A model generated the notes under the pieces. It saw nothing but the letters and a program-made list of their open reading frames with translations. It made no database searches and was not told where the DNA came from. Made by a program: the position numbers and the translations under genes. A DNA stretch of 64,000 bases from positions 124,001 to 188,000 of IMG/VR virus record IMGVR_UViG_3300029908_000004. One strand, given 5' to 3'. Positions 6,505-31,365 of the stretch are shown one piece after another; position 1 is the stretch's first letter, and every line of letters begins with the position of its first letter.

Positions 6505-7032
6505 ATGTCATTAATTCAAGAACCAGAACACAAAGACTTAACAGGTCGTATTATATCGTTGAATCTACATGTATGTAAGAGATTCCAATGTGGAGGATTC
6601 GCTCTGGGACCGGCTCGTCCTTTTTCAGTGGTAGAGCCAACAGCCCAACAAGGAATAATACGTCAAGGATTAATTGATGGTAGGTTACTAGATATAACAG
6701 ACCAAAACATACAAGGGGTTTCTATAGGAGAAACTTCACATAGTCCAGCTCATGTACTAGAAGAAAAAGGTAAGAAAGTATATCTTCAGATAAACCAAGA
6801 CGGTAGTCTTACTGTAATAGCCCCGAAAGATGAAGCGGATGAAGCTAAGCGTGAAGAAGAGTTAGCTACTATGGGCGTACTTATAGTAAATGAAGATGAG
6901 GTAGAGGTAGCTAAATCTACATTTGATCAGTCAGGTAAAATAGACACGTCGGGCGCGGAACAATTAATAACGAGTATGGCTGAAGTTATTGATATGGCAA
7001 AGTCTAAACAATCTCATAATAAGGTAAATTAA
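6505..7032 (+). CDS. Hypothetical protein (head module)
   Basis: 175 aa, AGAGGAG RBS; no family recognised. Confidence 0.7.
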   Translation: MSLIQEPEHKDLTGRIISLNLHVCKRFQCGGFALGPARPFSVVEPTAQQGIIRQGLIDGRLLDITDQNIQGVSIGETSHSPAHVLEEKGKKVYLQINQDGSLTVIAPKDEADEAKREEELATMGVLIVNEDEVEVAKSTFDQSGKIDTSGAEQLITSMAEVIDMAKSKQSHNKVN

Positions 7033-7787
7033 TGTCTACAGCTCCAACATTATTATCTGTGTCACCACTAGATAACGCAACAGACGTTATATTAGGTTGT
7101 AATATAGTATTGACTTTTAGTCAGCCTATAAATCAACTAACTGTAACTGCTGATACCTTCCTACTACAGGGCCCCGGTCAGACAACTATGATTGGTCCTG
7201 AACAGTTGGAATCTATCAATCCGTTATCTGTAGTTGGTAGAGAATATATATTAGGTAGTTTTAATTGGGACCCAACGTCGACAATACTTACGTTTGTTCC
7301 AGATAAGCCTTTACAGCCTAATATGCTCTATAATATAATGATAGTTGGAACTGGCGGCGGATTAAGTAAGAGTTATGTATCAGGGACGAGTGGGTTATCC
7401 TTAGATAACACATATAAATGGAGCTTTACTACAGGGAACGTCAATGTAAAGAGCCCTCCTATACAGTGTCCTTTACCTCCATTTAGGAATCCAATTTATC
7501 CAGGAGATATAAAAATAGACATTGCCCCACGATTAAAGCCTGTTGGTAATGATTTATCCCAAGAAATAAATATTATATTTCCAGCTCCGATTGATCTTTC
7601 TACATTCAGTCCAGCTGATTTACAAGCCAGTATAGATCCAATATTGAATGATATTTATGTAAGAGTCCCATCAACCTTAGTATTTACCGTAGCTTTAAGC
7701 TTGGATGCCACAACTATAAATATAAATATAACAGGATGGCCACCAGATTGGGAACAAAACTGGAACTGGGGAGGTTATGGTGGATAG
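7032..7787 (+). CDS. Ig-like (Big_5/SbsA-type) domain virion protein
   Basis: PTLLSVSPLDNATDVILGCNIVLTFSQPIN...LTFVPDKPLQPNMLYNIMI...YKWSFTTG matches the bacterial Ig-like pattern. Confidence 0.7.
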   Translation: MSTAPTLLSVSPLDNATDVILGCNIVLTFSQPINQLTVTADTFLLQGPGQTTMIGPEQLESINPLSVVGREYILGSFNWDPTSTILTFVPDKPLQPNMLYNIMIVGTGGGLSKSYVSGTSGLSLDNTYKWSFTTGNVNVKSPPIQCPLPPFRNPIYPGDIKIDIAPRLKPVGNDLSQEINIIFPAPIDLSTFSPADLQASIDPILNDIYVRVPSTLVFTVALSLDATTININITGWPPDWEQNWNWGGYGG

Positions 7788-8289
7788 TAATTCAGAAGCT
7801 AGATTAAGTAAGGTATACCCAATTCTAGCATCTAAAATAAGGATTCTAGCTGAGAAGCTATTAGAAGAAGGTATTGAAATTAGGGTGGTACAAGGGCTTC
7901 GAACATACCAAGAACAAGGCGACCTTTACGCTAAAGGAAGAACTGCTCCAGGACCTAAGGTAACTGATGCCCCACCAGGGTATTCATGGCATAATATGGG
8001 AGTTGCTGTAGACGTCTGCCCGGGTATCTCTGGTGAAGACCCATGGGCACCAGATTGGAATGCAGCCCACCCTGCTTGGAAACAAATATGGACTATTGGA
8101 ACTGGCTTAGGATTAGTTTCTGGGGCTCTTTGGAAGGGTATCCCAGATAAACCCCATTTCCAGTTAGCAAATATAGGTCCAGTAGACGCTCCAGATGATG
8201 AATTACGAAAAATCATAGCAACAGGTGGGGTTCAAGCGGTCTGGAAAGAGATAGAAAGACGAATAAATGAAAGTAATCTACATACTTAA
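7777..8289 (+). CDS. Endolysin, peptidase M15 (L-Ala-D-Glu peptidase-like)
   Basis: VVQGLRTYQEQGDLYAKGRT, SWHNMGVAVD and DKPHFQL Zn-ligand motifs. Confidence 0.88.
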   Translation: MVDSNSEARLSKVYPILASKIRILAEKLLEEGIEIRVVQGLRTYQEQGDLYAKGRTAPGPKVTDAPPGYSWHNMGVAVDVCPGISGEDPWAPDWNAAHPAWKQIWTIGTGLGLVSGALWKGIPDKPHFQLANIGPVDAPDDELRKIIATGGVQAVWKEIERRINESNLHT

Positions 8290-8985
8290 AGATCCAATTG
8301 ATAACAATGTGCGGTATGTCGGCGTAACTACTAATCCACGTAAACGATTAATAGTGCACATAAGTCAAGCTAAGCGTGGTAGAAGTAATCGTAAGAATTA
8401 CAGGTCTACCCATCGTGATAATTGGATTAATAAATTATTATCAAGGAATCTAAAACCAGAGATGGAGATTATAGAAGAGGTTAGCGATAATTGGGCTGAT
8501 AGAGAACGATGGTGGATATCTCACTACAAGAAGTTGAATGCCCTCTTACGAATCATACTGAAGGTGGAGAAGGAACGTTTGGACATAAACAGTCGCTTGA
8601 AACCCGTAAGAAGCATAGTGATTCTATGAAAGCTTATTTCTCAAACGTGTCTAATAGACAAAAGACAAGAAATGCGTTATTAGGACACATAGTAAGTGCA
8701 GAAACAAGAGGTAAACAAGCTGCTGCGATGCGAGGTAGAAAGTGTCCACAGCACGTTAAAGAGATAGCTTCACAAACATTGAATAAACTTATAAATAGTC
8801 TTCCGAATAGATTCTGTAAACAATGTAATAATGAATTCAAGCCAATTCAGTTTAATAGTTGTTTTTGTTGTAAAGATTGTGCCAAAATTAGTTTTTCTAT
8901 TTATCACAAGGAATATAAGAAAACTTACAAACAAAAGAAACTATTTCCAGATAACGGGAAGATTTCCAGAGGATGCGCCAGATAA
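8267..8985 (+). pseudogene. GIY-YIG homing endonuclease split by a frameshift
   Basis: ORF 8267-8629 carries VIYILKD...RYVGVTTNPRKRL...ERWWISHYKKL. The continuation CPLTNHTEGGEG, NUMOD3-like repeats (HKQSLETRKKHS; HIVSAETRGKQ) and a CxxC...CxxxC finger are in the -1 frame (8509-8985). The junction is at ~8534-8539. Confidence 0.8.
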
Positions 8986-9064
8986 CGAGGTTAGACAGAT
9001 TATAAAAGTTTCTGGGATGCAAACGTTGTGGGATGATATTACCAAATCGTGTAATACAGGATAA
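8943..9064 (+). pseudogene. Displaced duplicate of the endolysin 3' end
   Basis: FQITGRFPEDAPDNEVRQIIKVSGMQTLW aligns without gaps to endolysin FQLANIGPVDAPDDELRKIIATGGVQAVW. Both copies begin at ATTTCCAG (8156-8163 and 8943-8950). Confidence 0.75.
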
Positions 9065-9150
9065 AGAAAGTAGAAACTACAAACAAACACTATTGAATAG
9101 TGTATAATGTAATTAAGTCTTTCTTAATAGGAAGACTAGGAGATAAGATC

Positions 9151-9510
9151 ATGTCGTTCTGGGATAAAGTTGTTGCATTTTTCAAAACAAATTATGCCAA
9201 AGCAAGCGCTGGATTTGTAAGTATGTTCGGCAAAGACGCGGCAGAGGAATTTGCGCATGGCGCAGAAGCTCTACTAAAGACCGGTTTAGGAATTATTGCG
9301 ACAGATGCTGTTATGGCATCCTCTTCACTAGTACGCAATCCTAATGGTTCACCAGCAACATCAACAGATAAAAGAAATGCTGCTTTCCAGAAGATAGCTG
9401 TTGATGCAAAATCTCAAGGAATAAATGTTACCTCTTCTATAGCAAACCTATTGATAGAATTAGCTGTACAAAAAGTGGTAGCAAATAACGTTATTTCAAA
9501 CATAAAGTAA
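9151..9510 (+). CDS. Lysis-cassette-associated hypothetical protein (holin-like candidate)
   Basis: AGGAGA RBS favours ATG 9151 over the track start 9100. Amphipathic 119-aa protein; its function is inferred from context only. Confidence 0.45.
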   Translation: MSFWDKVVAFFKTNYAKASAGFVSMFGKDAAEEFAHGAEALLKTGLGIIATDAVMASSSLVRNPNGSPATSTDKRNAAFQKIAVDAKSQGINVTSSIANLLIELAVQKVVANNVISNIK

Positions 9511-9523
9511 CTAATCTAATCTC

Positions 9524-9555
9524 AAATTAGGAGGTATTTAGGTACCTCCTACTTT
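9524..9555 (+). terminator. Intergenic hairpin, terminator-like
   Basis: TAGGAGGTA-TTTAGG-TACCTCCTA followed by CTTT. Confidence 0.55.
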
Positions 9556-9601
9556 GTGATAAAGATGAAAATTCAAGCGGCCCTAGGAGGGTCGGTTCTA
9601 G

Positions 9602-10174
9602 ATGAATAAAACACTTATAGCTATAGTTTTAGGCTTAGCCATGATTACTACAGCTTGTACAACCTCAATGATTAGCACAATCTTGGGTTATGTAAATACG
9701 TTCCTACCTATAGCTGAAACTATTACTGGTCTTGTTATGGCTACAGAAAACCCAACTTCAGTGGCTTCTATTCAGTCTGTTGAACAGAAGATTAACGCTG
9801 ATCTTCAAGAGATTCAGTTGTTAGGTGCTGGTTATTCAACAGCTAATGCTACTACCACGGATCAGAAGATTTTAGCTGTAGCTAAAGATATCCAGATTAA
9901 TATAAATGGAATCTTAACCTCAACTAACGTTGTTAATCCAACAACAAAGCTAGAAGTAGAAGCATTTGTTTTACTTGGTGATGATCTTGTGAATGACATC
10001 ATCAATTCTTTGCCAGTTTCTAATTCTACTGTATCTGCTTCTCAGGTTCAATTCAGGACTAGTACAGCAGTTAGTTCCTACAAGAAACGTTATAACAAAT
10101 TAATCCGCACTAAGAGCGGAGACGCACGAGTAGATGCCGTGCTATCAAGCAGACATAAACTTGTAACTTGGTAA
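9602..10174 (+). CDS. Putative lipoprotein (spanin-like candidate)
   Basis: MNKTLIAIVLGLAMITTA|C: basic N-terminus, hydrophobic core and an imperfect lipobox at Cys19; helical body. Confidence 0.55.
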   Translation: MNKTLIAIVLGLAMITTACTTSMISTILGYVNTFLPIAETITGLVMATENPTSVASIQSVEQKINADLQEIQLLGAGYSTANATTTDQKILAVAKDIQININGILTSTNVVNPTTKLEVEAFVLLGDDLVNDIINSLPVSNSTVSASQVQFRTSTAVSSYKKRYNKLIRTKSGDARVDAVLSSRHKLVTW

Positions 10175-10219: not shown

Positions 10220-11098
10220 ATGTCAATGAGCTTTCTAAAACTGTCACCCGCCGGTCGTCGTTACGGGCGTTATCCTGATAACCCGTTTTCCCCAGCTAAA
10301 ACACTACTTAAAATAACAGCTCCATCTAATTTAGTATTACCACCAACTGCTACTACTTCTCAATGGATGGGCCCAATTCGTGATCAAGCACAAGAGGGTT
10401 CCTGCACGGGGCAATTGAAAGCTGAATACCGTGATTGGATGTACCGTAAGTTGTATATGTTTGAGAAAGATAAAACAATAGCTACAGCGGACTTTATGTC
10501 TTCAGCAGCTTTTGCTTATCAGACAAACCTTGCGGCTGATGGTGATATTGGACAGGATGCGGGATCAACAATCCACACAACGTTTAAAACTTTAAATAAG
10601 TTTGGTGTATGTCTAGCTCCACAAGAACCATATCTTGGAACAGATTATATGTCTGCCCCTACTCAACAAGAATATGCTGAAGCTCTTATCTATAAAGGAG
10701 GACCATATCATTCATTACCAACATTAACAGATGTTAAATTCTCAATTTCTTCTGGCTATGCCGTTGGTATAGGAATTAATGTGTATTCTTCTTTTGAAGA
10801 AACCCAAATACAGACTACTGGGTTTATGCCAATGCCGGCACCTGGCGAGAGTTTATTAGGTGGTCATGCACAACTAGTTTTAGACTATAATGACACAATT
10901 GCTTTCCCAGATGAAACCACTGGTGGTGTATTTATCCAGAATTCATGGGGCAGTTCATGGGGTATTTCAGCACAAGGCCGCACTGACGGCGGTTGTTATT
11001 GGATGCCTTATGCTTTCTTTAATTATCAAGACCCAAGTGGTAATGGATCGGGAGTCTCTGATATGTGGATGATGCATGAGGGCTCAATTTGGCAGTAA
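10220..11098 (+). CDS. Papain-family (C1A) cysteine peptidase
   Basis: RDQAQEGSCTG (Q56, C62), GGHA (H216) and IQNSWG (N241): a complete catalytic set. Confidence 0.88.
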   Translation: MSMSFLKLSPAGRRYGRYPDNPFSPAKTLLKITAPSNLVLPPTATTSQWMGPIRDQAQEGSCTGQLKAEYRDWMYRKLYMFEKDKTIATADFMSSAAFAYQTNLAADGDIGQDAGSTIHTTFKTLNKFGVCLAPQEPYLGTDYMSAPTQQEYAEALIYKGGPYHSLPTLTDVKFSISSGYAVGIGINVYSSFEETQIQTTGFMPMPAPGESLLGGHAQLVLDYNDTIAFPDETTGGVFIQNSWGSSWGISAQGRTDGGCYWMPYAFFNYQDPSGNGSGVSDMWMMHEGSIWQ

Positions 11099-11151: not shown

Positions 11152-11799
11152 ATGTATTATCCTGGCGATTCTTACACATTCACTCTATTTATAACAACTT
11201 CTACCGGTGTAACTCCAAGCGTAACGGCCAATCCAATGATACAGATAATAAATGCTGCTACTGGTACCTCTGTGCTAGGAACCGCTGGTGCAATGACTTT
11301 AATACCTAGTACCACCTGTGTATATAAGTATACGTGGGTTATATCTTCCTCTGCGACAGCAGGGGAATATGTAGCTGTAGCCTCTTATGCAGCTAATGGA
11401 AATACGTTCTCAGGTTATCCATTTGAGACTGTTTCCATAGGGGATTCCCGGATTACTGGAATAGTGGCATTAAATAATACAGTAGCTTTAAACGCTACTG
11501 TTGCTAAAGATGCTACTGTTGCCCACTTTAGTGATTTGGCTAATATAAACCCAACTTCCAATCCAACGGTAATGGCTATAAAGGCTAAAACAGATCTAAT
11601 ACCAGCGATTCCTGCTGCACAATCTGACGTATTATCAGTACAGACAGTAGTAGATTACATCGAATCTATAGTGGCTGCTGATATGTCTATTGATAAAACT
11701 ACTAATCCAGTAGTTATGACATTAACTTATGAAGGTAACACTATAGCTATCTATAACATAGTTGATGACTCAACTACTTCTGGAAGAATACAAACCTAA
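11152..11799 (+). CDS. Putative virion structural protein (N-terminal Ig-like beta-sandwich)
   Basis: 215 aa, T/A/V-rich and beta-type; translationally coupled to the fibre gene. Confidence 0.55.
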   Translation: MYYPGDSYTFTLFITTSTGVTPSVTANPMIQIINAATGTSVLGTAGAMTLIPSTTCVYKYTWVISSSATAGEYVAVASYAANGNTFSGYPFETVSIGDSRITGIVALNNTVALNATVAKDATVAHFSDLANINPTSNPTVMAIKAKTDLIPAIPAAQSDVLSVQTVVDYIESIVAADMSIDKTTNPVVMTLTYEGNTIAIYNIVDDSTTSGRIQT

Positions 11800-14700
11800 T
11801 GACCCGGTTGATTGACCCTTCACAATATTTCACTAGATACCAATCAGATGCACGTTACTTGGGCAGGTCACAACCTGCCCCACCACCTATTGGGCTATCT
11901 ATGATATCCACAGCCCTATCTGCTACTCCTGGCTATTCCTCTGTAGTGATTGAGTTGATTGATCCCTCTATTCCGTTTTGGGCGGATACAGGTGGTCCTT
12001 ATGTGTATTATTATATGTTTGATTGTACACCTACGATAGCCGGTGTGGCACAAGCAACAAATACAATAACTTTACCATATTCTTCTTCTTGTATTTACAC
12101 CTTACCTGCGTTAATATCTGGTGCAAATTACTCTATATCTGCTAGAACTGTAGATTATACCGGACAGCCAGGAACAGAGAGTACAGCAGTAGAAATAACA
12201 ACAACAACAAATACTTCTACTCCTACAGCTATAACTATTACTGCTGCCCCATGTATTGGTGGTGCGCAGATAGTTCTTAGTGCTCTCAATACTGATCCAG
12301 ATTTTAGTCAATATGAACTCTATAGAGGAAATGGTTATGTAAGCTCTCCAGTATCTTGGGGAGTCGCTCCCATTATTGTAGCTACATTTACTAACGTTAT
12401 GATACCTAATGGGGTGTTTATCGACCATTCGATACCTGCTACTTCTACTGATTATTATTACTATATAGTTGAAGTAAATCTGAGTGGCAACACCACAGTC
12501 ACGCCAATTGTAGGACCATTAAGCCTAGTTGGTACTAGTGTAGCTCCTCCACCTACACCAAGTTTGGTAACAGCTTCTGGAACAGTAAATTCAGACGGTT
12601 CAATAATTATCTCCTTTCAATCGTTAACATTAACAACAGCCCCAACAGTTACATCCTATAATATCTATCGTAGAATTACTGGAACTGCTCAGTGGCTATC
12701 ATTAGTTAATTTACCAACAACGATGGAAGTAAACTCTACTACTATCACTTATATAGATACCTACACTATTATAGGAATGAACTATACTTATGGGGTAACC
12801 TCTGTAGACTCATACGGCGATGAAAGTAGTATGGACACAGATCATTTAATTATGGTGACCTCAACGGTTACAACAACCATAGCAGCTCCAAGCGATGTTG
12901 TATTAACTGGGGTACAAGGTGGGGTAAACGTATCTTGGCTTATTACAAGAGGAGCTGTTGGTTATGAGATATGCTATAGATTTGCGCAAGTTGGATCATC
13001 AGATTTAACTTCGTGGAGTGACCCAATAAATGTACAATCTAATTCCTATACAATTTTTGGTCTGGAATACCCAGAATCTCCAGTTGGCCCGCCAACAAGA
13101 GATGTATTAGCTAATAGTTTTGAGGTGAGCCTCCGTTCATATAATTCGATAATGGATTATTCTCCGTACTCTTACTTAATAGCAACATATCCAGATTTAA
13201 ATAATTACTTTCCGGCTGATACTTCGTTACCACCAGCTCCTATTAAAGTTACGCCAGTCATAAGTAACGCAGCTTCTATTACGCTTACTTGGACAGCTCC
13301 TGTTACTAATAGTTTAGCTGGATATCAGATAGAGCAACAATCTGTTTACGATGATACACCTAGCTCTTGGTCTATATTAGCACTTATAAACGACCCAACT
13401 GCTGGGACTAAGTCTTTTATTGCTAATGGTTTAGAGCCGTATGCTTTTACTAACACTTCTTATATATTTAGGGTGAGAAGTGTAGACACAAGTGGTAATT
13501 TGTCTTCACCAAATCTAGTGTTCAACCCTGGGTTTGAAGATGTACCAACCACCTCTCCTTTTGGTATCCCTTTCTGGTCTTATATTGGTGACGCTCCATC
13601 TATTATAACTACTGATACCAGAAATAATTCTCTTCGAGCAATGAAGCAAGATGGTACTACACAGCTATCACAATCAATAGAGGTGATTGGCGGTTTAGTT
13701 TATACCGCCTCTTGCTTTGTTACTAGTGACCCAGCTATTAATGGGTCCCCTAATCCAAACACTTCTGTCCAAATGCAGATAACGTTTTCTAATACATTAG
13801 GGTTATCAGAAACTTATAATAGTAATAGGATCACAACGAATATAGGTTATCAAAGATTAGTTGTTACCGCTACAGCTCCTATCGCAGCTACCATAGCTAA
13901 AGTTACTCTTCTTAATGACCCAACAAATACAGCACAAACAGCCATATGGGATGATGCACAAGTTGAACAATGTCCTTTCGCTACTATTTATGCTGATGGT
14001 AAAACGGAACAAGTAAATGCTGTTGAGACTAGTGGACCACAACCTTATCTTGTAAATGGGTTACCACTTGTGTTATCTATTGCTGGGTCTTTGGGGGCTA
14101 TTAATTTATCATGGATTAACCCATCTAGAGATTTTAGTGGTTACTATGATTACATAAACGGTGCGTTTGAGATATGGAGAATGGTAACTGTCTCTGAACA
14201 ATCAAATATGCCAGTATCCACTAGTTATATAAAGATAGCAGAGGTACCCTCTTTTGTGTCTGCCAGCGGTATAACTAGCTACAATAGTTATTCTGATCTA
14301 CAACCGGAAGAAAACAATAATATTACTGCTTCCTATGAATTACGTGGAATAGATAGATTCGGTAATGAAGGAAATCAGGTTCTAGCCGGTCCTTTATCTG
14401 CTACATCACAGACTCCTAATGATATACAGATAGTGACAGACATCCACGTACCACCACCGACTCCTATATTGGTTGGCAGTGGTTGTGGGGCGGTAGCAAA
14501 TTCAGATGGTAGTATCTCTGTGTCTTGGAATGGGATCACCCCCTTAGATTGTGTAACTCTAGGTGGTTATAACTTATGGAGGATGATAATCCCGTCTGGT
14601 ACAACACCAACCCCATTATGGAATTCGTTATTAGCAACAATTTCTATAGGACCTTCTACTGGTGGGGATATAGTAACATTTATAGATACTAGTACTAACC

Positions 14701-16490
14701 CAGGAGCGTTATATTGGTATAATGTTTCATCATTCGATAGGGTGGGAAATCAATCTCCCCCTAGCTCTACATATTTTACCTGTACCTCTGCTAATTATTC
14801 TCTTCCAGAACCGGTGCCATCAGGCAGTGTGATTGGGACAGGGACTATGGGGGCGATAGTTTTAACATGGTCCCCTTCTCCAAGCAATATTAACCAATAT
14901 AAAGTATATTGGTCGAACAATTATGGAACTTCTTTTACTTCATTTACAGTTTCTGGAACTACAGCTACAGTCGTGTTAACTAGTGGAGACCCAGCAGCGT
15001 TATTAACAACTGATTTTTCTGCGCATATCACAGCTCTTTCTATCAGCCCTAATTCATCTACTGGGTTATACGTAGAGTCTGCTCCAGTTAGTATGAATAC
15101 GCCTCCTGATCTGACTGGATACATGCCACAGACGTCAGGTACCCCGGCTCCACCAGCTAGTATAACAGCCACACCACAGACGTCAACAGATATAACTCTA
15201 TCTTGGCCTGCTTCTACTTCCACAGATATAAATTATTATATAATTGAAAGCCAATCAACAAATAATAACACTATGGTATCTTCTCCTTGGTGTTATATAG
15301 GGACGGTACCAGCTCCTTCTACAGGATACAGGGTATCTGGGCTACAATCTAGTACGATAAGCCAATTATTATGGACATTTAGAATTTGGTCAGTAAATAA
15401 TACTAGTGTAGTGTCTGCTACTCCTGCGGTATCAAGTCCAGTACCTGTATTAATAGATACTACCCCTCCTGCTATACCGGTAGGTCTAAGTGGGACATTC
15501 CTGAATAGTGGATCTACAGCTACTGCTACTATTTGTTGGACTCCAAATATAGAGCCGGATTTCGACCATTACCTATTACAGTACCAAGCTAGTAGTTTAT
15601 CTGGTACACCAACATCTATAAATGTTCCTGGTATTACACCAACTACTACTATAACTGGATTACCACAATCTATTAGTTATAATTTTATGGTAGCCGCAGG
15701 GGATACTCTTGGTAACACTAGTGCTTTCTGTTCTCCTCTAGTTATAACTTCAACAACCGGTAGTGGCACAGTACCAACTGCTCCAACGGTTTCTGAAACG
15801 TTTACCGCCCCTTATTCAGGTATTTTAACCATTACGTATACCCCTCCTTCTAATTTCACGTGCTATTCGATTTATAGAGCAACGACTAGTTCGCAAGGAT
15901 CTTTATTAGGCACCTGTACTACTAGTACATACACTGATTTCGTTATGTCGTATTCTAATATAACTTATTACTACTGTGTTACAGCTACGAACAGTAGTGG
16001 TCTTTCAAGTGTGATTTCAAATATTGTATCTATAACTTATACCGGAACTGGAAGCAACGGGGCTTGCCCGGCAGAAAATATGTGGGTTACTCAGGATAAG
16101 CAAGCAAAGCAAGTTGTAGCTGGGGATTTATTAGATATTCTGCTGAATAACGATGTATCAAGCAAAGGGCTAGTGATTTCCAATTCTCATACTTACGCAG
16201 CTTGTGTAGAGCTGAAAGCGGATAATGGAGCCACTGTAATAGTTTCTAGGAATACGCCGATGGTATTAAAGGATAATACACAAAGGTATGCTTCAGAAAT
16301 GCAGCTACAGCTAGTAGCAACTGATATAGGAAACGGGATTGAATGGTCACCAGTCACTGTTTACGATGCTGGAATTCGTAGGGTTTGTCATATATACCTA
16401 GGAGGAAAGATTTTTGCTGCTGGATCCTCAAAAGATAAGAGGGTATACACACATAACTCCCTTGCTTATGGACCGATTAGGACAAAATAA
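11799..16490 (+). CDS. Large fibronectin-III repeat fibre protein with a CBM-like domain and a C-terminal Hint domain
   Basis: About 10 FN3-type repeats (e.g. ITLTWTAP...AGYQIE...YIFRVRSVDTSGNLS). NLVFNPGFED...W...LSQSI...YTASCFV is CBM4/9-like. Ends in a Hint-like domain. Confidence 0.8.
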   Translation: MTRLIDPSQYFTRYQSDARYLGRSQPAPPPIGLSMISTALSATPGYSSVVIELIDPSIPFWADTGGPYVYYYMFDCTPTIAGVAQATNTITLPYSSSCIYTLPALISGANYSISARTVDYTGQPGTESTAVEITTTTNTSTPTAITITAAPCIGGAQIVLSALNTDPDFSQYELYRGNGYVSSPVSWGVAPIIVATFTNVMIPNGVFIDHSIPATSTDYYYYIVEVNLSGNTTVTPIVGPLSLVGTSVAPPPTPSLVTASGTVNSDGSIIISFQSLTLTTAPTVTSYNIYRRITGTAQWLSLVNLPTTMEVNSTTITYIDTYTIIGMNYTYGVTSVDSYGDESSMDTDHLIMVTSTVTTTIAAPSDVVLTGVQGGVNVSWLITRGAVGYEICYRFAQVGSSDLTSWSDPINVQSNSYTIFGLEYPESPVGPPTRDVLANSFEVSLRSYNSIMDYSPYSYLIATYPDLNNYFPADTSLPPAPIKVTPVISNAASITLTWTAPVTNSLAGYQIEQQSVYDDTPSSWSILALINDPTAGTKSFIANGLEPYAFTNTSYIFRVRSVDTSGNLSSPNLVFNPGFEDVPTTSPFGIPFWSYIGDAPSIITTDTRNNSLRAMKQDGTTQLSQSIEVIGGLVYTASCFVTSDPAINGSPNPNTSVQMQITFSNTLGLSETYNSNRITTNIGYQRLVVTATAPIAATIAKVTLLNDPTNTAQTAIWDDAQVEQCPFATIYADGKTEQVNAVETSGPQPYLVNGLPLVLSIAGSLGAINLSWINPSRDFSGYYDYINGAFEIWRMVTVSEQSNMPVSTSYIKIAEVPSFVSASGITSYNSYSDLQPEENNNITASYELRGIDRFGNEGNQVLAGPLSATSQTPNDIQIVTDIHVPPPTPILVGSGCGAVANSDGSISVSWNGITPLDCVTLGGYNLWRMIIPSGTTPTPLWNSLLATISIGPSTGGDIVTFIDTSTNPGALYWYNVSSFDRVGNQSPPSSTYFTCTSANYSLPEPVPSGSVIGTGTMGAIVLTWSPSPSNINQYKVYWSNNYGTSFTSFTVSGTTATVVLTSGDPAALLTTDFSAHITALSISPNSSTGLYVESAPVSMNTPPDLTGYMPQTSGTPAPPASITATPQTSTDITLSWPASTSTDINYYIIESQSTNNNTMVSSPWCYIGTVPAPSTGYRVSGLQSSTISQLLWTFRIWSVNNTSVVSATPAVSSPVPVLIDTTPPAIPVGLSGTFLNSGSTATATICWTPNIEPDFDHYLLQYQASSLSGTPTSINVPGITPTTTITGLPQSISYNFMVAAGDTLGNTSAFCSPLVITSTTGSGTVPTAPTVSETFTAPYSGILTITYTPPSNFTCYSIYRATTSSQGSLLGTCTTSTYTDFVMSYSNITYYYCVTATNSSGLSSVISNIVSITYTGTGSNGACPAENMWVTQDKQAKQVVAGDLLDILLNNDVSSKGLVISNSHTYAACVELKADNGATVIVSRNTPMVLKDNTQRYASEMQLQLVATDIGNGIEWSPVTVYDAGIRRVCHIYLGGKIFAAGSSKDKRVYTHNSLAYGPIRTK
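16065..16457 (+). other. Hint (intein-like) domain, 131 aa
   Basis: Begins at Cys (CPAENMWV...AKQVVAGD), block-B-like VIVSRNTPM, block F RVCHIYL, and ends YTHN followed by Ser. Confidence 0.72.
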
Positions 16491-25867: not shown

Positions 25868-26389
25868 ATGATTATTTATCAAGCGACATGGCCTGACGGC
25901 TATACTGTCAAGTGGCGCAACCTAACTTGGGCAGAATATCGTAGAATAGAACCATCATACCTAGGAGCCTCTTCTAGGTTTTCTTATCCTATGGGGGCTT
26001 ATTTAGATGTATACAAACTAGTGATGCTAGATGGGCCACTCCCACAATTTGTGCCAGCGGGAATAGTAGCATACGTTGCTATACAACAGCTAAGTACTAA
26101 CCCATTCAATGGTACCTATGATGATATAAAAGGTCAATTATATTTATCTAGACAGAGATTAGAATCTAGTTATCTAGAAACAGCGAAGTGCTTGATAGCT
26201 GCAGCATTTAAATATAGATTCGAAGAAATGGAAGATTGGGATCCAATAACTTTCTTTGATATGTTAGCAAGAGCAGAGAAGGTATTGGGCCGGCTAGCAG
26301 AACCAAATAACCCTAATGAAGTTAAAGCCCCATCAATTCCAGAAGATGTTAAAAGAGAAGCATTACATAGAAATAGAAGGAAAAAGTAA
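25868..26389 (+). CDS. Putative tail assembly chaperone 2
   Basis: 173 aa; stop overlaps the ATG of the giant gene (TAATG). Confidence 0.5.
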   Translation: MIIYQATWPDGYTVKWRNLTWAEYRRIEPSYLGASSRFSYPMGAYLDVYKLVMLDGPLPQFVPAGIVAYVAIQQLSTNPFNGTYDDIKGQLYLSRQRLESSYLETAKCLIAAAFKYRFEEMEDWDPITFFDMLARAEKVLGRLAEPNNPNEVKAPSIPEDVKREALHRNRRKK

Positions 26390-29300
26390 TGGCAAAAGCA
26401 CGGAAGCCTAAGAAGAATATGTTTATCCTAGATATTGAAACCTCCCACACTAATTGGGAAGAGCTCAATCGTCTAGAAGGAAAGTTTTCTATCAGAGGGA
26501 TCTTCGAAGCTTCCAAAGAAGGTGCTTACGGCACTTCAGCTTTTTCTACTGCCTTTGTTAATAACCAAATCCTTCAGATGCATATTGAAGAATCTAAGGC
26601 ATATAGGAAATTTTCTGCTGATGGATCTAAGGTATATAAGAAAGGTTCTGGTTATACAAAACTATTCCTAGATAAGAATCATATCCTACCTTATAGAGAT
26701 ATCGTTAAGAATGTTGAATTTCCTATATTCTTAGACAAGTTTTCTAATGACATTGCAGCAGATGCTTTAAAGTACGCCACTCTTACAGAGGAGCAACAGC
26801 TAAGAAGACTCTTCCAAGCTGTGCAAGGAAAATCTATAAAAGCTGGTGGTCCTATTCAGCTTGCTGGATGGAATGTAAAATATGACATTGCTTCTCTTAA
26901 AGCCTCTGCAGCTAGATACTCCTCTCTAAATAAATATGTAGAATTCTTTGATAAAGCCTATGCTACTAATAAGATACAGTTTGTAAGCTTAGAAGACGAG
27001 TTGTTTAAACAAGTATGGACGCATGCTTCGCAGAATCCTGACTTAATGCGTCATCTTACAGATAAGGCTCGTGCCAGAACATTTGATCTTACATTAGAAC
27101 TTAAGAGTTCTGAAGATTTAAAGAACGTTCCGGGTTGGAAAGCTTCTAAGATAGCTAGAATGCTAGGTCTTGGAGAAGAACTTCATCGTGCAGCCGCAGA
27201 TGTAGCATTAGAGAGAATGATATACGAGGCTGTAATTACAAACGGTCTGACTCTAGAGCACATCAAAGCGATGTATGGTGCTTGGAGAACCGAAGCATCT
27301 TCTATAAAAGAAGTAACAGAAGTTATCGGTGACATAAGACCACTAAATGGGTTTGCTTTACTAGCAGGAGCCGCCGCTGCAATAGCAGCGGGCTTAGCAT
27401 TCAGTACCAGATCCTCTAGACAGACTACTATTGTTGGTTTATCAGATAATGGTAAAGCCAAGGATTCCAGACACAAACACACCTCGTTTGGTTCTGGATG
27501 GCACGGACTAGGAGAAGATAATAGTAGCTTAAATTATAAAGCTCTTGGCGCAGCTGGCTTTGCTGCAGCAGGGTATTCCTATTTCCGTAAGGTTATCGTT
27601 CCAGGAAAAGGACCTTTCTCTGTAGATAAACTACACAGCTTTGTAAGTACATTAGAAGATTACAGCCCATTTAAAATTGGTAGAACTTTTGGTATTAGTC
27701 AATACATAAGTTCTTATACTACTCCTAGTAAATTACACGTTGGTTATAGTGAATTAGTAGGACAGGGTGGTAAATATACTGAGTTAGGTGAACATTTTGA
27801 TCGCCTATTTACTGGTTCTAATGTAGATTTACGTTCCCAAAAAGGGTTGAATTTTATAAGGACTGATTATGGTCCTTATATGGAACTTGAGGGATACGGA
27901 GGAGACGTCCGTGCCCGTTTTACAAAGCGTGGAAGTCTATCTAGTTCTAGTTATAGATACAACAAACCTCTTGAAAATGTTCCTGTAACTTTCCTAAAAG
28001 AGAGTACTCCTTGGGAAACTATTACAAAGAACTTTGGTCGCCTTCGTCATTCACAAGAACCAACTGGTTATAAAGGTGCTATCAGTGTTGGCGAAGAAGT
28101 AGAAGGTGTCTTCCAACCATATCTAGTTAATATAAAGAGTAGAGGCAAATTATTTAATTTCGCCGAAACTGCTAATAGAACAGCTCTTAGTCAAGCCGAA
28201 CGTGTACAGAGATTATTATCTGATATAGGGTTAGGATTAAAAGAAGGTACGTGGAATAAAGCTTTTCACGTCCCTATAATAGGTGAGGGTGGTTTAGTTA
28301 ACCAGCTTCTTACTAAGAGATTCGCTCCAGCAGCTCTATTAGTTGGATTAGCCCTTCCTTACATAGATTATAAAACTGGCCATTCTTTAAGCGGTATAGC
28401 ATTAGATACGTTCCAGCGCTTTAGATTAGCCCATGCTTCCCTTACTGATCATTTTCTGCGTGGTGTAACAGATAAATATGAACAGATTGTACCCGGTCCA
28501 CAGTACGGTCCATTAGCCTTACCAGTATCTGGAGCCTTTGTTGGTGGGGTACTTCAATACTCTAATGTATTAAGAACTAGATACACAAAGGGAGAAAAAG
28601 CAGCAGAGTTACTTCGTTCAGGAAGTAAATTCTTCTCCGCCCCCGGACAAAAGTCAATCTTAGGTATCCTAAACCGTGAGAATAAGGGTGCTGTTGGTGT
28701 AGCTATTGGACTAGCGCTAATGCTTCCCTTCATTCCGGGGATGATTGGGTCTAGGAAAACAAAGGAAGAACTACAACGGACATACTCTGGTGAGGATCCA
28801 GTAGAAATAAAAGCTGGTCGCTGGTGGGATATGGGAACCACAGCGTTAGAAGGTGGTCGTGTAAAGGAGTATCGCCCACACTGGTCTGTTCTATGGCGCG
28901 CACAAGCAGAGAAGAAGGCTTTATATGGATCAGAGAAAGAGTACTGGAGACATAACCCGATACTTCATCCATTACGCTGGTTAAGAGATCCTTATTTCCT
29001 AGAAGAAAAGCATTATGAGGATAGGCCATACCCAGAGACTTCACCTGCGTTTACTAATGTTCCATTAGTAGGACCACTATTAGCTTCTACTATTGGTCAA
29101 ATTGTAAAACCAATCAGGAAGATGCATCCAGAGTGGGATACAACTGACTATACATTAGGGTCAACTCGTCTAGAACCGAGAGGTCCTAAAGCATTACCAG
29201 CAGCAGAACCAACATCAGAATTCTCTTTAGGTGACACAGCTCAAAGATCAATTAAAGCTGCTACTGAATTCGTTGGATTGCCGGGCTTTATCGGGCGTAG

Positions 29301-31365
29301 CTTATGGAATAAAACTTTCCCTGGATATGGATCTATGGGTGAGAATGTAAAGTTCCAAGGTTCCCGACAAATGACTAATTATAGTCGTAAATACTACGAG
29401 CTAGAACTAGGTGCTGTATCTGGTGTAAGTCCTGACTTTGAATTATTTGGATATTCTGAACCTTTCCGTCGTTTCGTACAGAACGAAGGAAAGTTACTTC
29501 AGGCTAATAGTATTAAGAATAAAATGCCTTCTTGGCTTCCTGGAGAGGATTATTTTATTAACTTCAGAACAGGTGACCCTTATGTAAAGATTTCAACTGG
29601 ATTCGCTCGTCTGCCGGGTGAGGGTTATGCAGCTCTACACCCAGAACTAGAAGGTGTCAGTCCAGAGGATTACCCAGATATGGAGAAATTACGTATCTTA
29701 GGGGATGTAGCACCATATTCTAGAGAGTTTGCTATCTTCAAAGGAAAGGTTAGGAAGGACATCAGAGGAGATACAGAAAGTTTAGCTGAGTATGAGAGTA
29801 TTATGGCTCGCGCTAATAAGATGCGCAAATCAGTTATTCGGACAGAGGAGCAGAGGTTCTCAAAGGATGTAGAAGAAACCACTGGAACAGTAAAAGCTCT
29901 AGGCTCAGCTGGTGTAGAGTTAAATGAATATCCGGGTCGTATATTTAGAATGAGCGGCGTTTCTACTACTGCTGCAGATATGTCTGCCGTTGTATTATCA
30001 CAATATAATGATATGACGAAGGAGGATGCTGCTAAGGAAATAGATGTAAGAAGAGCTGAGCTAGATAAATTCTTATCAGATACTTTCACTGCTGGCACAA
30101 AAGTAACGGCTACTTTCCAGAAAGGGGCTTTAGATAAAGAAACTAATATACGATCTGTATTAGAAATAGATGGATTAAACATCAATAAAGCTATAGTTGG
30201 TGAGGGTTACGGTACCTACGATAAAGCTTCTGCTGGGGCTGAATGGCAAGCTATGTTCAATCCAGCAGAAAGATTACTAGGAAGGTACGCAGAAGAAGCC
30301 TCATTCGCTGAAGAAGCACCTTGGTGGAACCCCCTTAGATGGTTACCTACACCTTATCATACCAAGCTGTGGCAAGAACGTTCAGCGCTAGCTCAGTACG
30401 TAGATCAAGAAACTGTCGGAACTCGTATGCGTAGGTGGGATAAGCCGATTAAAGACTTCTTGGCTCCGTATTACCATGGGCTATTACATAGGGTAAGCGG
30501 AGAAGTATTTATTCCAGAGGCAACAGTAGAAAAGCGGAATTTAAATACTATGGTAGATATGTTAGATTATCTACGAGATTTGAATTTAGCTTCTACCGAC
30601 TCTGAGAGTCGTGGCAGGTATACTAGTAAGGCTAGTAGGACAGCTATAGGTGCAAATCTTACTGGGTCCACCACTTTCCTAGGCTCCACACTGCCTGATC
30701 GTGATACTAGATACTTCAAAGAATTTGTAAATTCTACTGACGATGAGGAAAGACAGAAGATACTAGATGTGGTGCCAGATGAAATGGCTAGAGCTTTAGA
30801 AGCTCAGTGGGCTGGTAAAGAGGCACAGATAGCAGAGTCTGAAGGCAAGGAGACTAATATACAGTTCTCTGGTGGTCGCCTTGTGAATAAAGAAGGTCTT
30901 GATCGTTTCAAGAAAGCAACAACAAAGCTCGATTATGGTGATTATGAAAGGTCCTTAGAGATATCTGATTTCTTCGCGAAGACTGGATTATCAGTTCCTG
31001 AATCAGATTCAGCGTTATGGGACCCAAACATTGATTATGAAGACGTAAAGCTAAAGATTATAGAGATGGAAGGTCGTGATTACCATGACTTCAATATATT
31101 TGATGATAGAGCTTCATTACTTTGGCGTAAACCTTATGTAGATGGTGCAGTACAAGAGTTAACGTCTGGAAACGATCGTTCGGAAGAACAGATTAGAAGA
31201 CAAGTTGAGCGACTTATGCTAGCAGCTAAGAATCCTAATGCTAACCCTTTCACTAGTGGTCACCCATCTCAAGATAGTAGGGGTAGCGCTACCATTAATG
31301 TAAACGTGGATCAGACTGAAGAGTTGCTAAAAGATATGCGACGTAATCCGGAGAATTATGATTAG
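26389..31365 (+). CDS. Giant tape-measure-position protein with an N-terminal DEDDh 3'-5' exonuclease and a possible degenerate SNase-like domain
   Basis: ExoI ILDIET (D15, E17), ExoII AGWNVKYDI (D166) and ExoIII HRAAAD (H266, D271). Several G/A-rich hydrophobic segments follow. IFRMSGVST...LEIDGLNINKAIVGEGYG resembles a thermonuclease fold. It follows the tail chaperones. Confidence 0.7.
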   Translation: MAKARKPKKNMFILDIETSHTNWEELNRLEGKFSIRGIFEASKEGAYGTSAFSTAFVNNQILQMHIEESKAYRKFSADGSKVYKKGSGYTKLFLDKNHILPYRDIVKNVEFPIFLDKFSNDIAADALKYATLTEEQQLRRLFQAVQGKSIKAGGPIQLAGWNVKYDIASLKASAARYSSLNKYVEFFDKAYATNKIQFVSLEDELFKQVWTHASQNPDLMRHLTDKARARTFDLTLELKSSEDLKNVPGWKASKIARMLGLGEELHRAAADVALERMIYEAVITNGLTLEHIKAMYGAWRTEASSIKEVTEVIGDIRPLNGFALLAGAAAAIAAGLAFSTRSSRQTTIVGLSDNGKAKDSRHKHTSFGSGWHGLGEDNSSLNYKALGAAGFAAAGYSYFRKVIVPGKGPFSVDKLHSFVSTLEDYSPFKIGRTFGISQYISSYTTPSKLHVGYSELVGQGGKYTELGEHFDRLFTGSNVDLRSQKGLNFIRTDYGPYMELEGYGGDVRARFTKRGSLSSSSYRYNKPLENVPVTFLKESTPWETITKNFGRLRHSQEPTGYKGAISVGEEVEGVFQPYLVNIKSRGKLFNFAETANRTALSQAERVQRLLSDIGLGLKEGTWNKAFHVPIIGEGGLVNQLLTKRFAPAALLVGLALPYIDYKTGHSLSGIALDTFQRFRLAHASLTDHFLRGVTDKYEQIVPGPQYGPLALPVSGAFVGGVLQYSNVLRTRYTKGEKAAELLRSGSKFFSAPGQKSILGILNRENKGAVGVAIGLALMLPFIPGMIGSRKTKEELQRTYSGEDPVEIKAGRWWDMGTTALEGGRVKEYRPHWSVLWRAQAEKKALYGSEKEYWRHNPILHPLRWLRDPYFLEEKHYEDRPYPETSPAFTNVPLVGPLLASTIGQIVKPIRKMHPEWDTTDYTLGSTRLEPRGPKALPAAEPTSEFSLGDTAQRSIKAATEFVGLPGFIGRSLWNKTFPGYGSMGENVKFQGSRQMTNYSRKYYELELGAVSGVSPDFELFGYSEPFRRFVQNEGKLLQANSIKNKMPSWLPGEDYFINFRTGDPYVKISTGFARLPGEGYAALHPELEGVSPEDYPDMEKLRILGDVAPYSREFAIFKGKVRKDIRGDTESLAEYESIMARANKMRKSVIRTEEQRFSKDVEETTGTVKALGSAGVELNEYPGRIFRMSGVSTTAADMSAVVLSQYNDMTKEDAAKEIDVRRAELDKFLSDTFTAGTKVTATFQKGALDKETNIRSVLEIDGLNINKAIVGEGYGTYDKASAGAEWQAMFNPAERLLGRYAEEASFAEEAPWWNPLRWLPTPYHTKLWQERSALAQYVDQETVGTRMRRWDKPIKDFLAPYYHGLLHRVSGEVFIPEATVEKRNLNTMVDMLDYLRDLNLASTDSESRGRYTSKASRTAIGANLTGSTTFLGSTLPDRDTRYFKEFVNSTDDEERQKILDVVPDEMARALEAQWAGKEAQIAESEGKETNIQFSGGRLVNKEGLDRFKKATTKLDYGDYERSLEISDFFAKTGLSVPESDSALWDPNIDYEDVKLKIIEMEGRDYHDFNIFDDRASLLWRKPYVDGAVQELTSGNDRSEEQIRRQVERLMLAAKNPNANPFTSGHPSQDSRGSATINVNVDQTEELLKDMRRNPENYD

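What the first reader, a model, noticed from the sequence alone, without database searches (positions are those of the whole stretch)
8156..9064. Homing endonuclease apparently inserted with its own replacement 3' end of the endolysin
Seen: the endolysin C-terminal ~40 aa occur twice, once in the intact gene and once as an orphan after the GIY-YIG gene. The copies are diverged and both start at ATTTCCAG in the codons for the conserved Zn-ligand motif (H)FQ. Established: some fungal mitochondrial GIY-YIG elements invade a gene while carrying a foreign 3' end that displaces the resident one. Inference: this is intron-less invasion of a conserved active-site sequence, giving a chimeric endolysin with a cleavage-resistant allele.
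Basis: partly seen in the sequence, partly recalled or inferred. Interest (0 to 1): 0.7.

Follow-up and report, generated by a model that had tools for sequence, protein, structure and literature searches.

The report
Endonuclease scar in phage endolysin gene
A selfish DNA-cutting gene, now broken, sits at the end of a peat jumbo phage's cell-wall-lysis gene together with a replacement gene end, and the displaced end survives just downstream as an orphan, an arrangement documented in fungal mitochondria that I could not find described for a phage.

Summary
The last ~40 codons of the M15 L-Ala-D-Glu peptidase endolysin (7777-8289) occur a second time at 8945-9064, after a GIY-YIG homing endonuclease gene (HEG, 8267-8985). 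The match is far above chance: z = 17.9 against shuffles, and a family tail profile hits the orphan at 7e-13.

The orphan starts inside the codon of the third Zn ligand, His127.

- The three closest HEG relatives in 1.8 billion proteins all overlap the 3' end of the same endolysin family.
- Of 78 other endolysin loci in IMG/VR, none has this HEG or a second tail.
- The two tails are anciently diverged (47% identity at third codon positions), so this is not a recent local duplication.
- A glycine invariant in 118 of 118 other homologues, five residues after the His, is lost in 3 of the 4 HEG-linked alleles but kept in the orphan.

Best reading: one-sided, break-induced invasion that copied a donor 3' end plus the HEG and joined illegitimately to the resident 3' end.

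The HEG now carries a 1-nt frameshift, present in every assembly examined.

Not shown: the cleavage site, resistance of the HEG-linked allele, and which tail was resident. No HEG-less close relative exists in public data.

The parts
7777..8289 (+). Intact endolysin, 170 aa. M15C / LAS-type L-alanyl-D-glutamate peptidase with predicted Zn ligands H72, D79 and H127.
   Evidence: Pfam VanY and Peptidase_M15_4. PDB profile hits to Ply500 (2vo9, E = 4e-36) and LysB4. AF2 model pLDDT 91, best Foldseek hit 2vo9. Its start overlaps the stop of the upstream Big_5 gene.
8155..8289 (+). Tail A: the in-frame 3' end of the endolysin (H127 to stop). Inferred to have arrived together with the HEG.
   Evidence: It is modelled as strand 127-130 plus helix 141-168 at high confidence. 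It lacks the family-invariant Gly at +5 after His (HFQLAN), as do 2 of the 3 other HEG-linked alleles. Its last 23 nt overlap the HEG start.
8267..8536 (+). HEG piece 1: the GIY-YIG catalytic domain up to just before the conserved Asn. The open frame runs on to a stop at 8627-8629.
   Evidence: PF01541, E = 5e-8. Subfamily HMM positions 4-91. 42-51% identical to P0128, P0122 and P0156.
8537..8541 (+). Frameshift site. Five bases stand where relatives have two codons, which implies loss of one base. Downstream homology continues in the next frame.
   Evidence: The HMM match jumps from position 91 (frame of 8267) to position 94 (frame of 8509). Alignment with intact relatives agrees. The sequence is identical in all assemblies and is bridged by an independent permafrost contig covering 8347-8682 without gaps.
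8542..8985 (+). HEG piece 2: the end of the catalytic domain (LTNHTEGGEG), the linker, and a Cys-rich C-terminal DNA-binding region. The last 13 codons plus the stop are read out of frame from the orphan tail.
   Evidence: phmmer against 1.84 billion representatives: best non-self hit P0122, E = 3e-16, query 12-130 matched to residues 96-217 of a 234-aa protein. PHROG 314. Relatives end 19-25 residues after the last Cys; the window reaches the junction after 21.
8942..8943 (+). Recombination junction. Homology to the endolysin family begins at A8943 (ATTTCCAG); there is none upstream of it.
   Evidence: DNA alignment of both copies against 54 family loci. The tail-profile match begins directly after the His position.
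8945..9064 (+). Orphan tail B: 39 codons plus stop, with no His codon and no upstream catalytic domain. Inferred remnant of the allele that was invaded.
   Evidence: It retains the family consensus FQ-I-TGRFPE-APD-EVRQ, including the invariant Gly. No stop or frameshift within it.
8921..8935 (+). Tentative short repeat X, just 5' of the junction. It matches 9074-9087, just 3' of the orphan stop, at 14 of 15 positions with one indel.
   Evidence: P is about 0.004-0.02 and post hoc. It may be a trace of donor intergenic sequence, or chance.
9151..9510 (+). Holin-like gene downstream, the next gene of the lysis cassette.
   Evidence: Pfam Phage_holin_6_1, E = 1e-5.

Best explanation
A free-standing GIY-YIG homing endonuclease lineage lives at the 3' end of this family of M15 endolysin genes, with its start codon inside the last endolysin codons.

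Proposed sequence of events (inferred):
1. A HEG-carrying phage and a HEG-less phage met in one cell.
2. The enzyme broke the HEG-less endolysin gene in or just upstream of the conserved His-Phe-Gln codons.
3. The left end invaded the homologous donor gene, and repair synthesis copied the donor's 3' end (tail A) and the HEG.
4. Homology beyond the HEG was lacking or was not used. The new strand was therefore joined illegitimately to the barely resected right end of the break.

The result is the present order: resident 5' part, donor tail A in frame, HEG, then the resident tail B as an orphan that starts inside the His127 codon.

Tail A differs from the family consensus directly after HFQ, which would protect the new allele from re-cutting. 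After fixation the HEG decayed through loss of one base.

Shown: the anatomy, the significance of the duplication, the conserved HEG-endolysin linkage, the uniqueness of the orphan, the ancient divergence of the tails, and the loss of the invariant Gly in HEG-linked alleles.

Inferred: the cleavage position, the direction of transfer, and the repair pathway.
For: - Duplication: z = 17.9, and the orphan is the only extra hit in the 215-kb genome. The tail profile hits the orphan starting directly after the His.
- HEG linkage: the three closest HEG relatives all overlap the stop of an endolysin of this family, by 28, 23 and 4 nt, against 23 nt in the window. Their flanking genes differ.
- Specificity of that linkage: 127 more distant GIY-YIG loci have no such neighbour.
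- Uniqueness of the orphan: 78 other endolysin loci hold 0 copies of this HEG and 0 second tails. The three HEG-linked relatives have no orphan either.
- Age of the tails: 57% DNA identity, 47% at third codon positions. 43 of 119 other tails are closer to B than A is.
- Target-site signature: H-x-Q-x-x-G is kept in 118 of 118 other homologues and in the orphan, and lost in 3 of 4 HEG-linked alleles, Fisher p = 1.4e-5. CCNCAYTTYCAR is the most conserved DNA stretch in this part of the gene.
- The HEG coding region is essentially complete at the junction.
- Precedents: endonuclease ORFs carrying a foreign C-terminus in fungal mitochondria (PMC3630166), and one-sided illegitimate DSB repair in T4 homing (PMC2988022).
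Against: - No HEG-less close relative was found, so neither the direction of transfer nor the left crossover is observed.
- Base composition does not mark tail A or the HEG as foreign.
- The similarity pattern of the N-terminal domain fits neither tail (Spearman -0.17 and -0.14, against a family median of 0.46). This is probably long-branch noise, but it gives no support.
- One HEG-linked allele (L018) keeps the Gly.
- HEG-linked tails are not clearly closer to tail A than average tails are.
- Cleavage specificity is untested, and the window's HEG is frameshifted.
Confidence: 0.6

Rival explanations
1. Ordinary mosaic (illegitimate) recombination joined two phage lysis cassettes, without a break made by this HEG. 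One parent contributed endolysin-tail A-HEG. The other contributed the tail B fragment, the intergenic region and the holin-like gene. The junction next to the HEG and at the His codon would then be coincidental.
For: The sequence alone is symmetrical with respect to which parent was 'resident'. No left crossover can be seen, and composition is uniform. Phage genomes are mosaic, and nuclease genes often sit at exchange boundaries (PMC10448857).
Against: The junction falls exactly in the most conserved DNA stretch of the 3' half of the gene and abuts the end of the HEG ORF. HEG-linked alleles are altered at exactly that place. Mosaic joints usually lie at gene borders and do not leave a 120-nt in-gene fragment.
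Confidence: 0.2
2. The polarity is reversed. Tail A is the resident end, and the HEG arrived carrying tail B on its 3' side, for example from a donor in which the HEG split the endolysin gene.
For: HEG-split genes exist in T4-like phages (PMC2988022). Tail B is intact and consensus-like, as a recently imported functional piece might be.
Against: None of the three related HEGs has an endolysin piece downstream. The tail A/HEG overlap is the canonical arrangement of the lineage. Tail A, not tail B, shows the loss of the invariant Gly typical of HEG-linked alleles. All three HEG-linked tails score closer to A than to B.
Confidence: 0.08
3. The endolysin 3' end was duplicated locally in tandem, the copies then diverged in place, and the HEG was inserted between them.
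For: Tail B ranks among the tails most similar to tail A: only 6 of 119 are closer.
Against: Third codon positions are 47% identical, about what saturation would give. 43 of 119 other tails are closer to B than A is. An orphan with no function would not have kept the family consensus through that much divergence. No HEG-less family member carries two tails.
Confidence: 0.05
4. The arrangement is an assembly chimera or a sequencing error, covering both the duplication and the frameshift.
For: The record is a metagenome assembly.
Against: The sequence is identical in at least 8 independent assemblies from ENA, Logan and IMG/VR. Contigs from separate peat and permafrost runs bridge 8347-8682 and 8577-9348 without gaps or joints.
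Confidence: 0.02

Closest known systems
Mobile endonuclease ORFs carrying a foreign gene C-terminus in fungal mitochondria (Allomyces macrogynus atp6; Glomus sp. atp6, atp9, cox2, nad3; PMC3630166 and the Allomyces work cited there)
   Same: The anatomy is the same: gene core, inserted C-terminus in frame, endonuclease ORF, and the native C-terminus displaced downstream. The two C-termini are diverged. The atp9 case also involves a GIY-YIG enzyme.
   Different: Here the host is a bacteriophage and the target is an endolysin gene. The HEG overlaps the stop codon of the inserted tail rather than being fused in phase. The HEG is frameshifted. No element-free sister genome is available to prove which end is native.
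Free-standing GIY-YIG Seg endonucleases of T4 (SegF, SegG and others): intronless homing with co-conversion (PMC2988022)
   Same: A free-standing GIY-YIG HEG sits between phage genes. The presumed cut lies in a neighbouring conserved gene, about 110-130 bp from the HEG. The donor-flanking sequence is inherited along with the HEG.
   Different: Seg homing between T-even phages uses homology on both sides and leaves no duplicated gene end. Here the right-hand joint is non-homologous and a scar remains.
One-sided homing with illegitimate double-strand-break repair, shown experimentally for the T4 td intron (Parker et al. 1999, as summarised in PMC2988022)
   Same: There is homology on one side only and a joint at little or no homology on the other. 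This is the repair route proposed here.
   Different: That was a laboratory construct with an intron-encoded enzyme. This would be a natural product involving a free-standing HEG.
Genes split by HEG insertion (Aeh1 nrdA/mobE, T4 genes 39/60 with mobA; PMC2988022, PMC3045599)
   Same: A HEG is inserted in a functionally critical, conserved part of an essential phage gene.
   Different: Those genes are cut into two pieces that reassemble. Here the gene stays whole because the HEG brought a replacement end, and the downstream piece is redundant.

Membership tests
GIY-YIG homing endonuclease (free-standing) | GIY-YIG catalytic domain with its conserved residues | tested here: met
   PF01541, E = 5e-8. 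VIY / YVG motifs, Arg and Glu (ERWWI) lie in piece 1; Asn (LTN) lies in piece 2.
GIY-YIG homing endonuclease (free-standing) | C-terminal DNA-binding region joined to the nuclease by a linker | tested here: inconclusive
   Piece 2 aligns to the linker and the Cys-rich C-terminus of P0122, P0128 and P0156. NUMOD3 is only sub-threshold in the relatives and absent in the window.
GIY-YIG homing endonuclease (free-standing) | Intact reading frame / active enzyme | tested here: not met
   One-base frameshift at 8537-8541, identical in all assemblies. It is a decayed member.
GIY-YIG homing endonuclease (free-standing) | Site-specific cleavage of HEG-less alleles, and homing | not testable with these tools
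   Indirect evidence only: conserved linkage to the endolysin 3' end and altered target-like codons in HEG-linked alleles.
Endonuclease ORF with foreign C-terminus ('gene hybrid', Allomyces atp6 type) | Two diverged copies of the gene's 3' end flank an endonuclease ORF, and the upstream copy is in frame with the gene core | tested here: met
Endonuclease ORF with foreign C-terminus ('gene hybrid', Allomyces atp6 type) | The downstream copy is the native one and the upstream copy is foreign, shown by an element-free relative | tested here: inconclusive
   No close element-free relative exists. Composition and congruence tests were uninformative.
Endonuclease ORF with foreign C-terminus ('gene hybrid', Allomyces atp6 type) | Element-free family members carry a single 3' end | tested here: met
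   Of the other 78 IMG/VR loci, 67 have one tail, 11 have none detectable and 0 have two.
M15C (LAS) L-alanyl-D-glutamate peptidase endolysin | H-x6-D and a distal His as Zn ligands; Ply500-like fold | tested here: met
   SWH72NMGVAVD79 and PH127 are invariant columns. 2vo9 by sequence, E = 4e-36, and by fold.
Group I intron carrying a HEG | Intron RNA structure around the HEG, interrupting the coding sequence | tested here: not met
   No Rfam intron match in 7500-9600 at E <= 1. The sequence after the His codon continues as a homologous, complete endolysin tail with its own stop.

The most novel reading that the evidence does not exclude
The endolysin 3' end plus the GIY-YIG gene form a mobile cassette that moves between unrelated phages and swaps a structural piece of a lysis enzyme as it goes. 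The window would then preserve a natural 'caught in the act' product of one-sided homing, in which the start of the orphan marks the cleavage position. It would also be the first phage counterpart I am aware of to the fungal mitochondrial gene hybrids. It would imply that homing endonucleases create sub-gene mosaicism in phage endolysins.
Probability: 0.5. Interest if true: 0.6.

Novelty: new member of a known kind. Interest (0 to 1): 0.5.

Why it matters
Homing endonucleases are thought to drive exchange between phages, but natural products that record how an invasion happened are rare. Normal homing erases its own traces.

Here the orphan tail fixes the position of the right-hand joint to a single codon. 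It points to the conserved HFQ(x)(x)G-coding sequence as the likely target. Together with three intact relatives, that gives a directly testable enzyme/target pair.

The case also suggests that a HEG can invade a phage sharing only one gene with the donor, provided it carries a replacement for the part of the gene it displaces.

The practical consequence for annotation is small: a short orphan ORF and a two-piece HEG that should be labelled as remnants.

Tried and rejected
1. HEG-less close relatives were sought in:
- IMG/VR, with the endolysin and both neighbouring genes.
- The 5.8-billion-protein collection and the contigs of the 99% cluster.
- GenBank phages, by DNA and by protein.
- IMG/VR again, with a degenerate DNA pattern for tail B.
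- Peat and permafrost runs.
Only identical copies of the same phage turned up, with no joint that skips the HEG.

2. GC and GC3 of tail A, the HEG and tail B against the genome all fall within normal scatter. This was rejected as uninformative.

3. Congruence of N-terminal and tail similarity patterns is low for both tails. The window's endolysin is about equally distant from all homologues, so the test cannot discriminate.

4. More endolysin-linked members of the HEG lineage were sought among 80 IMG/VR and 47 metagenome GIY-YIG loci. None was found.

5. A search with the C-terminal HEG piece in the word-indexed protein database found only itself. The exhaustive search was needed.

6. Group I intron: no match.

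7. Programmed frameshifting at 8537-8541 was considered. The surrounding sequence has no slippery heptamer by eye, and I did not pursue it.

8. The short repeat 8921-8935 / 9074-9087 could be a trace of donor intergenic DNA. It is only marginally significant and post hoc, so it is left as a lead.

Full report
**Setting.** The window is bases 124001-188000 of a 215,291-bp IMG/VR virus record that CheckV rates complete. It is a jumbo phage with 41% GC, and its sequence is present in more than 20 peat and permafrost metagenomes. All large ORFs in the window are on the + strand. GenBank phages contain nothing similar at the DNA level.

**Anatomy.**
- Endolysin: ORF 7777-8289 encodes a 170-aa M15 peptidase (Pfam VanY and Peptidase_M15_4).
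  - A profile of the family hits the Listeria phage Ply500 L-alanyl-D-glutamate peptidase (2vo9, E = 4e-36) and LysB4.
  - An AF2 model (pLDDT 91.4) has 2vo9 as its best structural match.
  - H72, D79 and H127 are invariant alignment columns. By homology with LAS/M15 peptidases (established knowledge) they are the Zn ligands.
  - After H127 the model shows a short strand (127-130), a loop, and a long, confidently modelled helix (141-168). The 'tail' is therefore a structured part of the enzyme.
- HEG: a GIY-YIG gene starts at 8267, 23 nt before the endolysin stop.
  - It is in two frames, 8267-8536 and then 8542-8985.
  - A subfamily HMM matches positions 4-91 in the first frame and 94-214 in the second.
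  - Five bases (8537-8541) stand where intact relatives have two codons, which means one base has been lost.
  - Both pieces hit PHROG 314 'homing endonuclease' in consecutive profile ranges.
  - It is the only GIY-YIG gene in the genome.
- Orphan: homology to the endolysin resumes at A8943, and 8945-9064 encodes 39 residues plus a stop.
  - The base before ATTTCCAG is T, not C, so the His codon is gone.
  - The HEG frame runs 13 codons into the orphan, out of frame, before it stops at 8985.
- Downstream: a holin-like gene follows at 9151.

**Is the duplication real?** Yes.
- BLASTP between the two tails gives E = 7e-13.
- The Smith-Waterman score is 89, against 18.6 +/- 3.9 for 5000 shuffles.
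- In all six frames of the 215-kb genome, nothing else scores above 44.
- A profile built from the tails of 119 other family members hits the orphan at 7.3e-13, starting at the residue directly after the His.
- The region is identical in at least 8 other assemblies.
- Independent contigs bridge the frameshift (8347-8682) and the HEG/orphan junction (for example 8577-9222 and 8628-9348) without gaps or joints.

**The tails are old alleles, not a fresh copy.**
- DNA identity is 57%. It is 25/36 at second codon positions but only 17/36 at third positions.
- 43 of 119 other family tails are more similar to B than A is, and 6 of 119 are more similar to A than B is.
- B is close to the family consensus (TGRFPE-APD-EVRQ) and A is the divergent one. 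85 of 119 homologous tails score higher with B than with A.

**The HEG belongs to a lineage tied to this endolysin family.**
- The word-indexed database found no relatives of the C-terminal piece.
- An exhaustive HMMER search of 1.84 billion representatives found P0122 (E = 3e-16), P0128 and P0156 as the only proteins that share the whole architecture.
- These three are 37-51% identical to the window's pieces.
- All three genes begin inside the last codons of an endolysin of this same family, with overlaps of 28, 23 and 4 nt. The window's overlap is 23 nt.
- Their genomic surroundings differ. In L015, for example, the upstream gene encodes a peptide deformylase.
- None of the three has a second tail.
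- Conversely, 80 IMG/VR and 47 metagenome loci with more distant GIY-YIG genes have no such endolysin nearby.
- Of 78 other IMG/VR loci of the endolysin family, none has this HEG and none has two tails. 67 have one tail, and 11 have none detectable by the profile.
- The tail A/HEG junction is therefore the canonical arrangement of the lineage, and the HEG/tail B junction is a one-off.

**A target-site signature.**
- In the DNA of 54 family loci, CCNCAYTTYCAR (Pro-His-Phe-Gln) is the most conserved stretch of the 3' half of the gene. The orphan begins inside it.
- In 118 of 118 other homologues the motif H-x-Q-x-x-G is kept.
- The Gly is missing in three of the four HEG-linked alleles: the window's tail A (HFQLAN), L014 (HFQYTP) and L015 (HFEDTN).
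- It is present in the orphan (YFQITG). Fisher's exact test gives p = 1.4e-5.
- Free-standing HEGs spare their own genome through differences in the target sequence (established for T4 Seg and Mob enzymes, PMC2988022). This pattern is what that mechanism predicts if the target spans the HFQ-x-x-G codons.
- It is indirect evidence. L018 keeps the Gly, and no cleavage was tested.

**Mechanism.** The most economical account is a double-strand break in a HEG-less endolysin gene at or just 5' of the His codon.
- The left end invades the donor's homologous gene.
- Synthesis runs through tail A and the HEG.
- The new strand is then joined non-homologously to the almost unresected right end.

The HEG coding region is essentially complete at the joint: 21 residues follow the last Cys, against 19-25 in relatives. 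The copied segment therefore ends right at the end of the HEG. This route has precedents:
- One-sided homing with illegitimate joints at microhomology was demonstrated in T4 (summarised in PMC2988022).
- The same anatomy is documented for endonuclease ORFs in fungal mitochondrial atp6, atp9, cox2 and nad3 genes (PMC3630166).
- Five literature searches found no phage example. That is not proof that none exists.

**What could not be settled.**
- Which tail was resident. The nearest other endolysins are at most 59% identical.
- Composition does not help. GC3 of A, the HEG and B all lie within the genome's scatter.
- A congruence test between N-terminal and tail similarity patterns is low for both tails: -0.17 and -0.14, against a family median of 0.46. 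It cannot discriminate, because the window's enzyme is about equally distant from everything.
- The three HEG-linked tails all score nearer to A than to B, but only weakly: 74/40, 69/66 and 68/58, p = 0.025.
- A simple mosaic recombination that happens to lie here remains possible (rival 1).
- A 14-of-15 repeat stands just before the junction (8921-8935) and just after the orphan stop (9074-9087). It could be a trace of donor intergenic DNA, which would point to a sibling phage as donor, but its significance is marginal and post hoc.

**State of the element.**
- The HEG is frameshifted in every assembly and contig examined. This fits the usual HEG life cycle of invasion, fixation and decay.
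- The orphan has no stop or frameshift and still scores well against the family profile, so the event is probably not very old.
- Metatranscriptome contigs cover 7978-8181 (the endolysin, running into tail A) and 9084-9352 (the start of the holin-like gene). These could also derive from DNA carried into the RNA libraries.

**Verdict.** Cleavage, resistance and polarity remain inferences. This is a new, natural phage member of a known kind of HEG-mediated gene-end replacement, of moderate interest.

Noticed in passing
window 8921-8935 and 9074-9087: A short direct repeat (AAACTTACAAACAAA / AAACTACAAACAAA) lies just before the orphan junction and just after the orphan's stop. Both copies are followed closely by ACTATT. 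It may be a trace of donor intergenic sequence and an ATT microhomology at the joint, or it may be chance (P about 0.004-0.02, post hoc).
   Followed up: partly
L126:2489-4004 (IMGVR_UViG_3300048796_000029): Another endolysin of the family also departs from the invariant H-x-Q-x-x-G (it reads HFQLGN). About 190 nt downstream lies an HNH endonuclease fused to a MazG-like domain (PHROG 374, E = 1e-48). A second, unrelated nuclease may therefore use the same neighbourhood.
   Followed up: partly
window 8831-9064: An ATG-initiated 77-aa ORF contains the orphan tail. It is preceded by a hydrophobic stretch read out of frame from the 3' part of the HEG. There is no evidence that it is expressed, and it is probably an accident of the T-rich alternative frame.
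   Followed up: no
window 8509-8518 and 7777-7786: The 10-mer ATGGTGGATA occurs at the endolysin start and at the first ATG of the second HEG frame. From that ATG, a 158-aa protein holding only the DNA-binding part of the HEG could be made. This was not tested.
   Followed up: no
window 9090-9104: Between the orphan and the holin-like gene lies a perfect hairpin (CACTATT GA ATAGTG) directly followed by TATAAT. The simple promoter/terminator scan did not call it.
   Followed up: no
window 11799-16490, 26389-31365, 32914-37839, 37839-43034: Four very large + strand ORFs (1563-1731 aa) lie downstream of the lysis cassette in this jumbo phage. They were not examined.
   Followed up: no
window 10220-11098: A 292-aa ORF matches a PHROG 'peptidase' family (E = 2e-9) a little downstream of the lysis genes. 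It may be a second lytic or processing enzyme.
   Followed up: no
window 9247 and 9408: These are the only polymorphisms seen among all assemblies and contigs laid on 7000-10000 (G>T in one ENA contig, A>G in one permafrost run). The phage population is nearly clonal across samples.
   Followed up: partly
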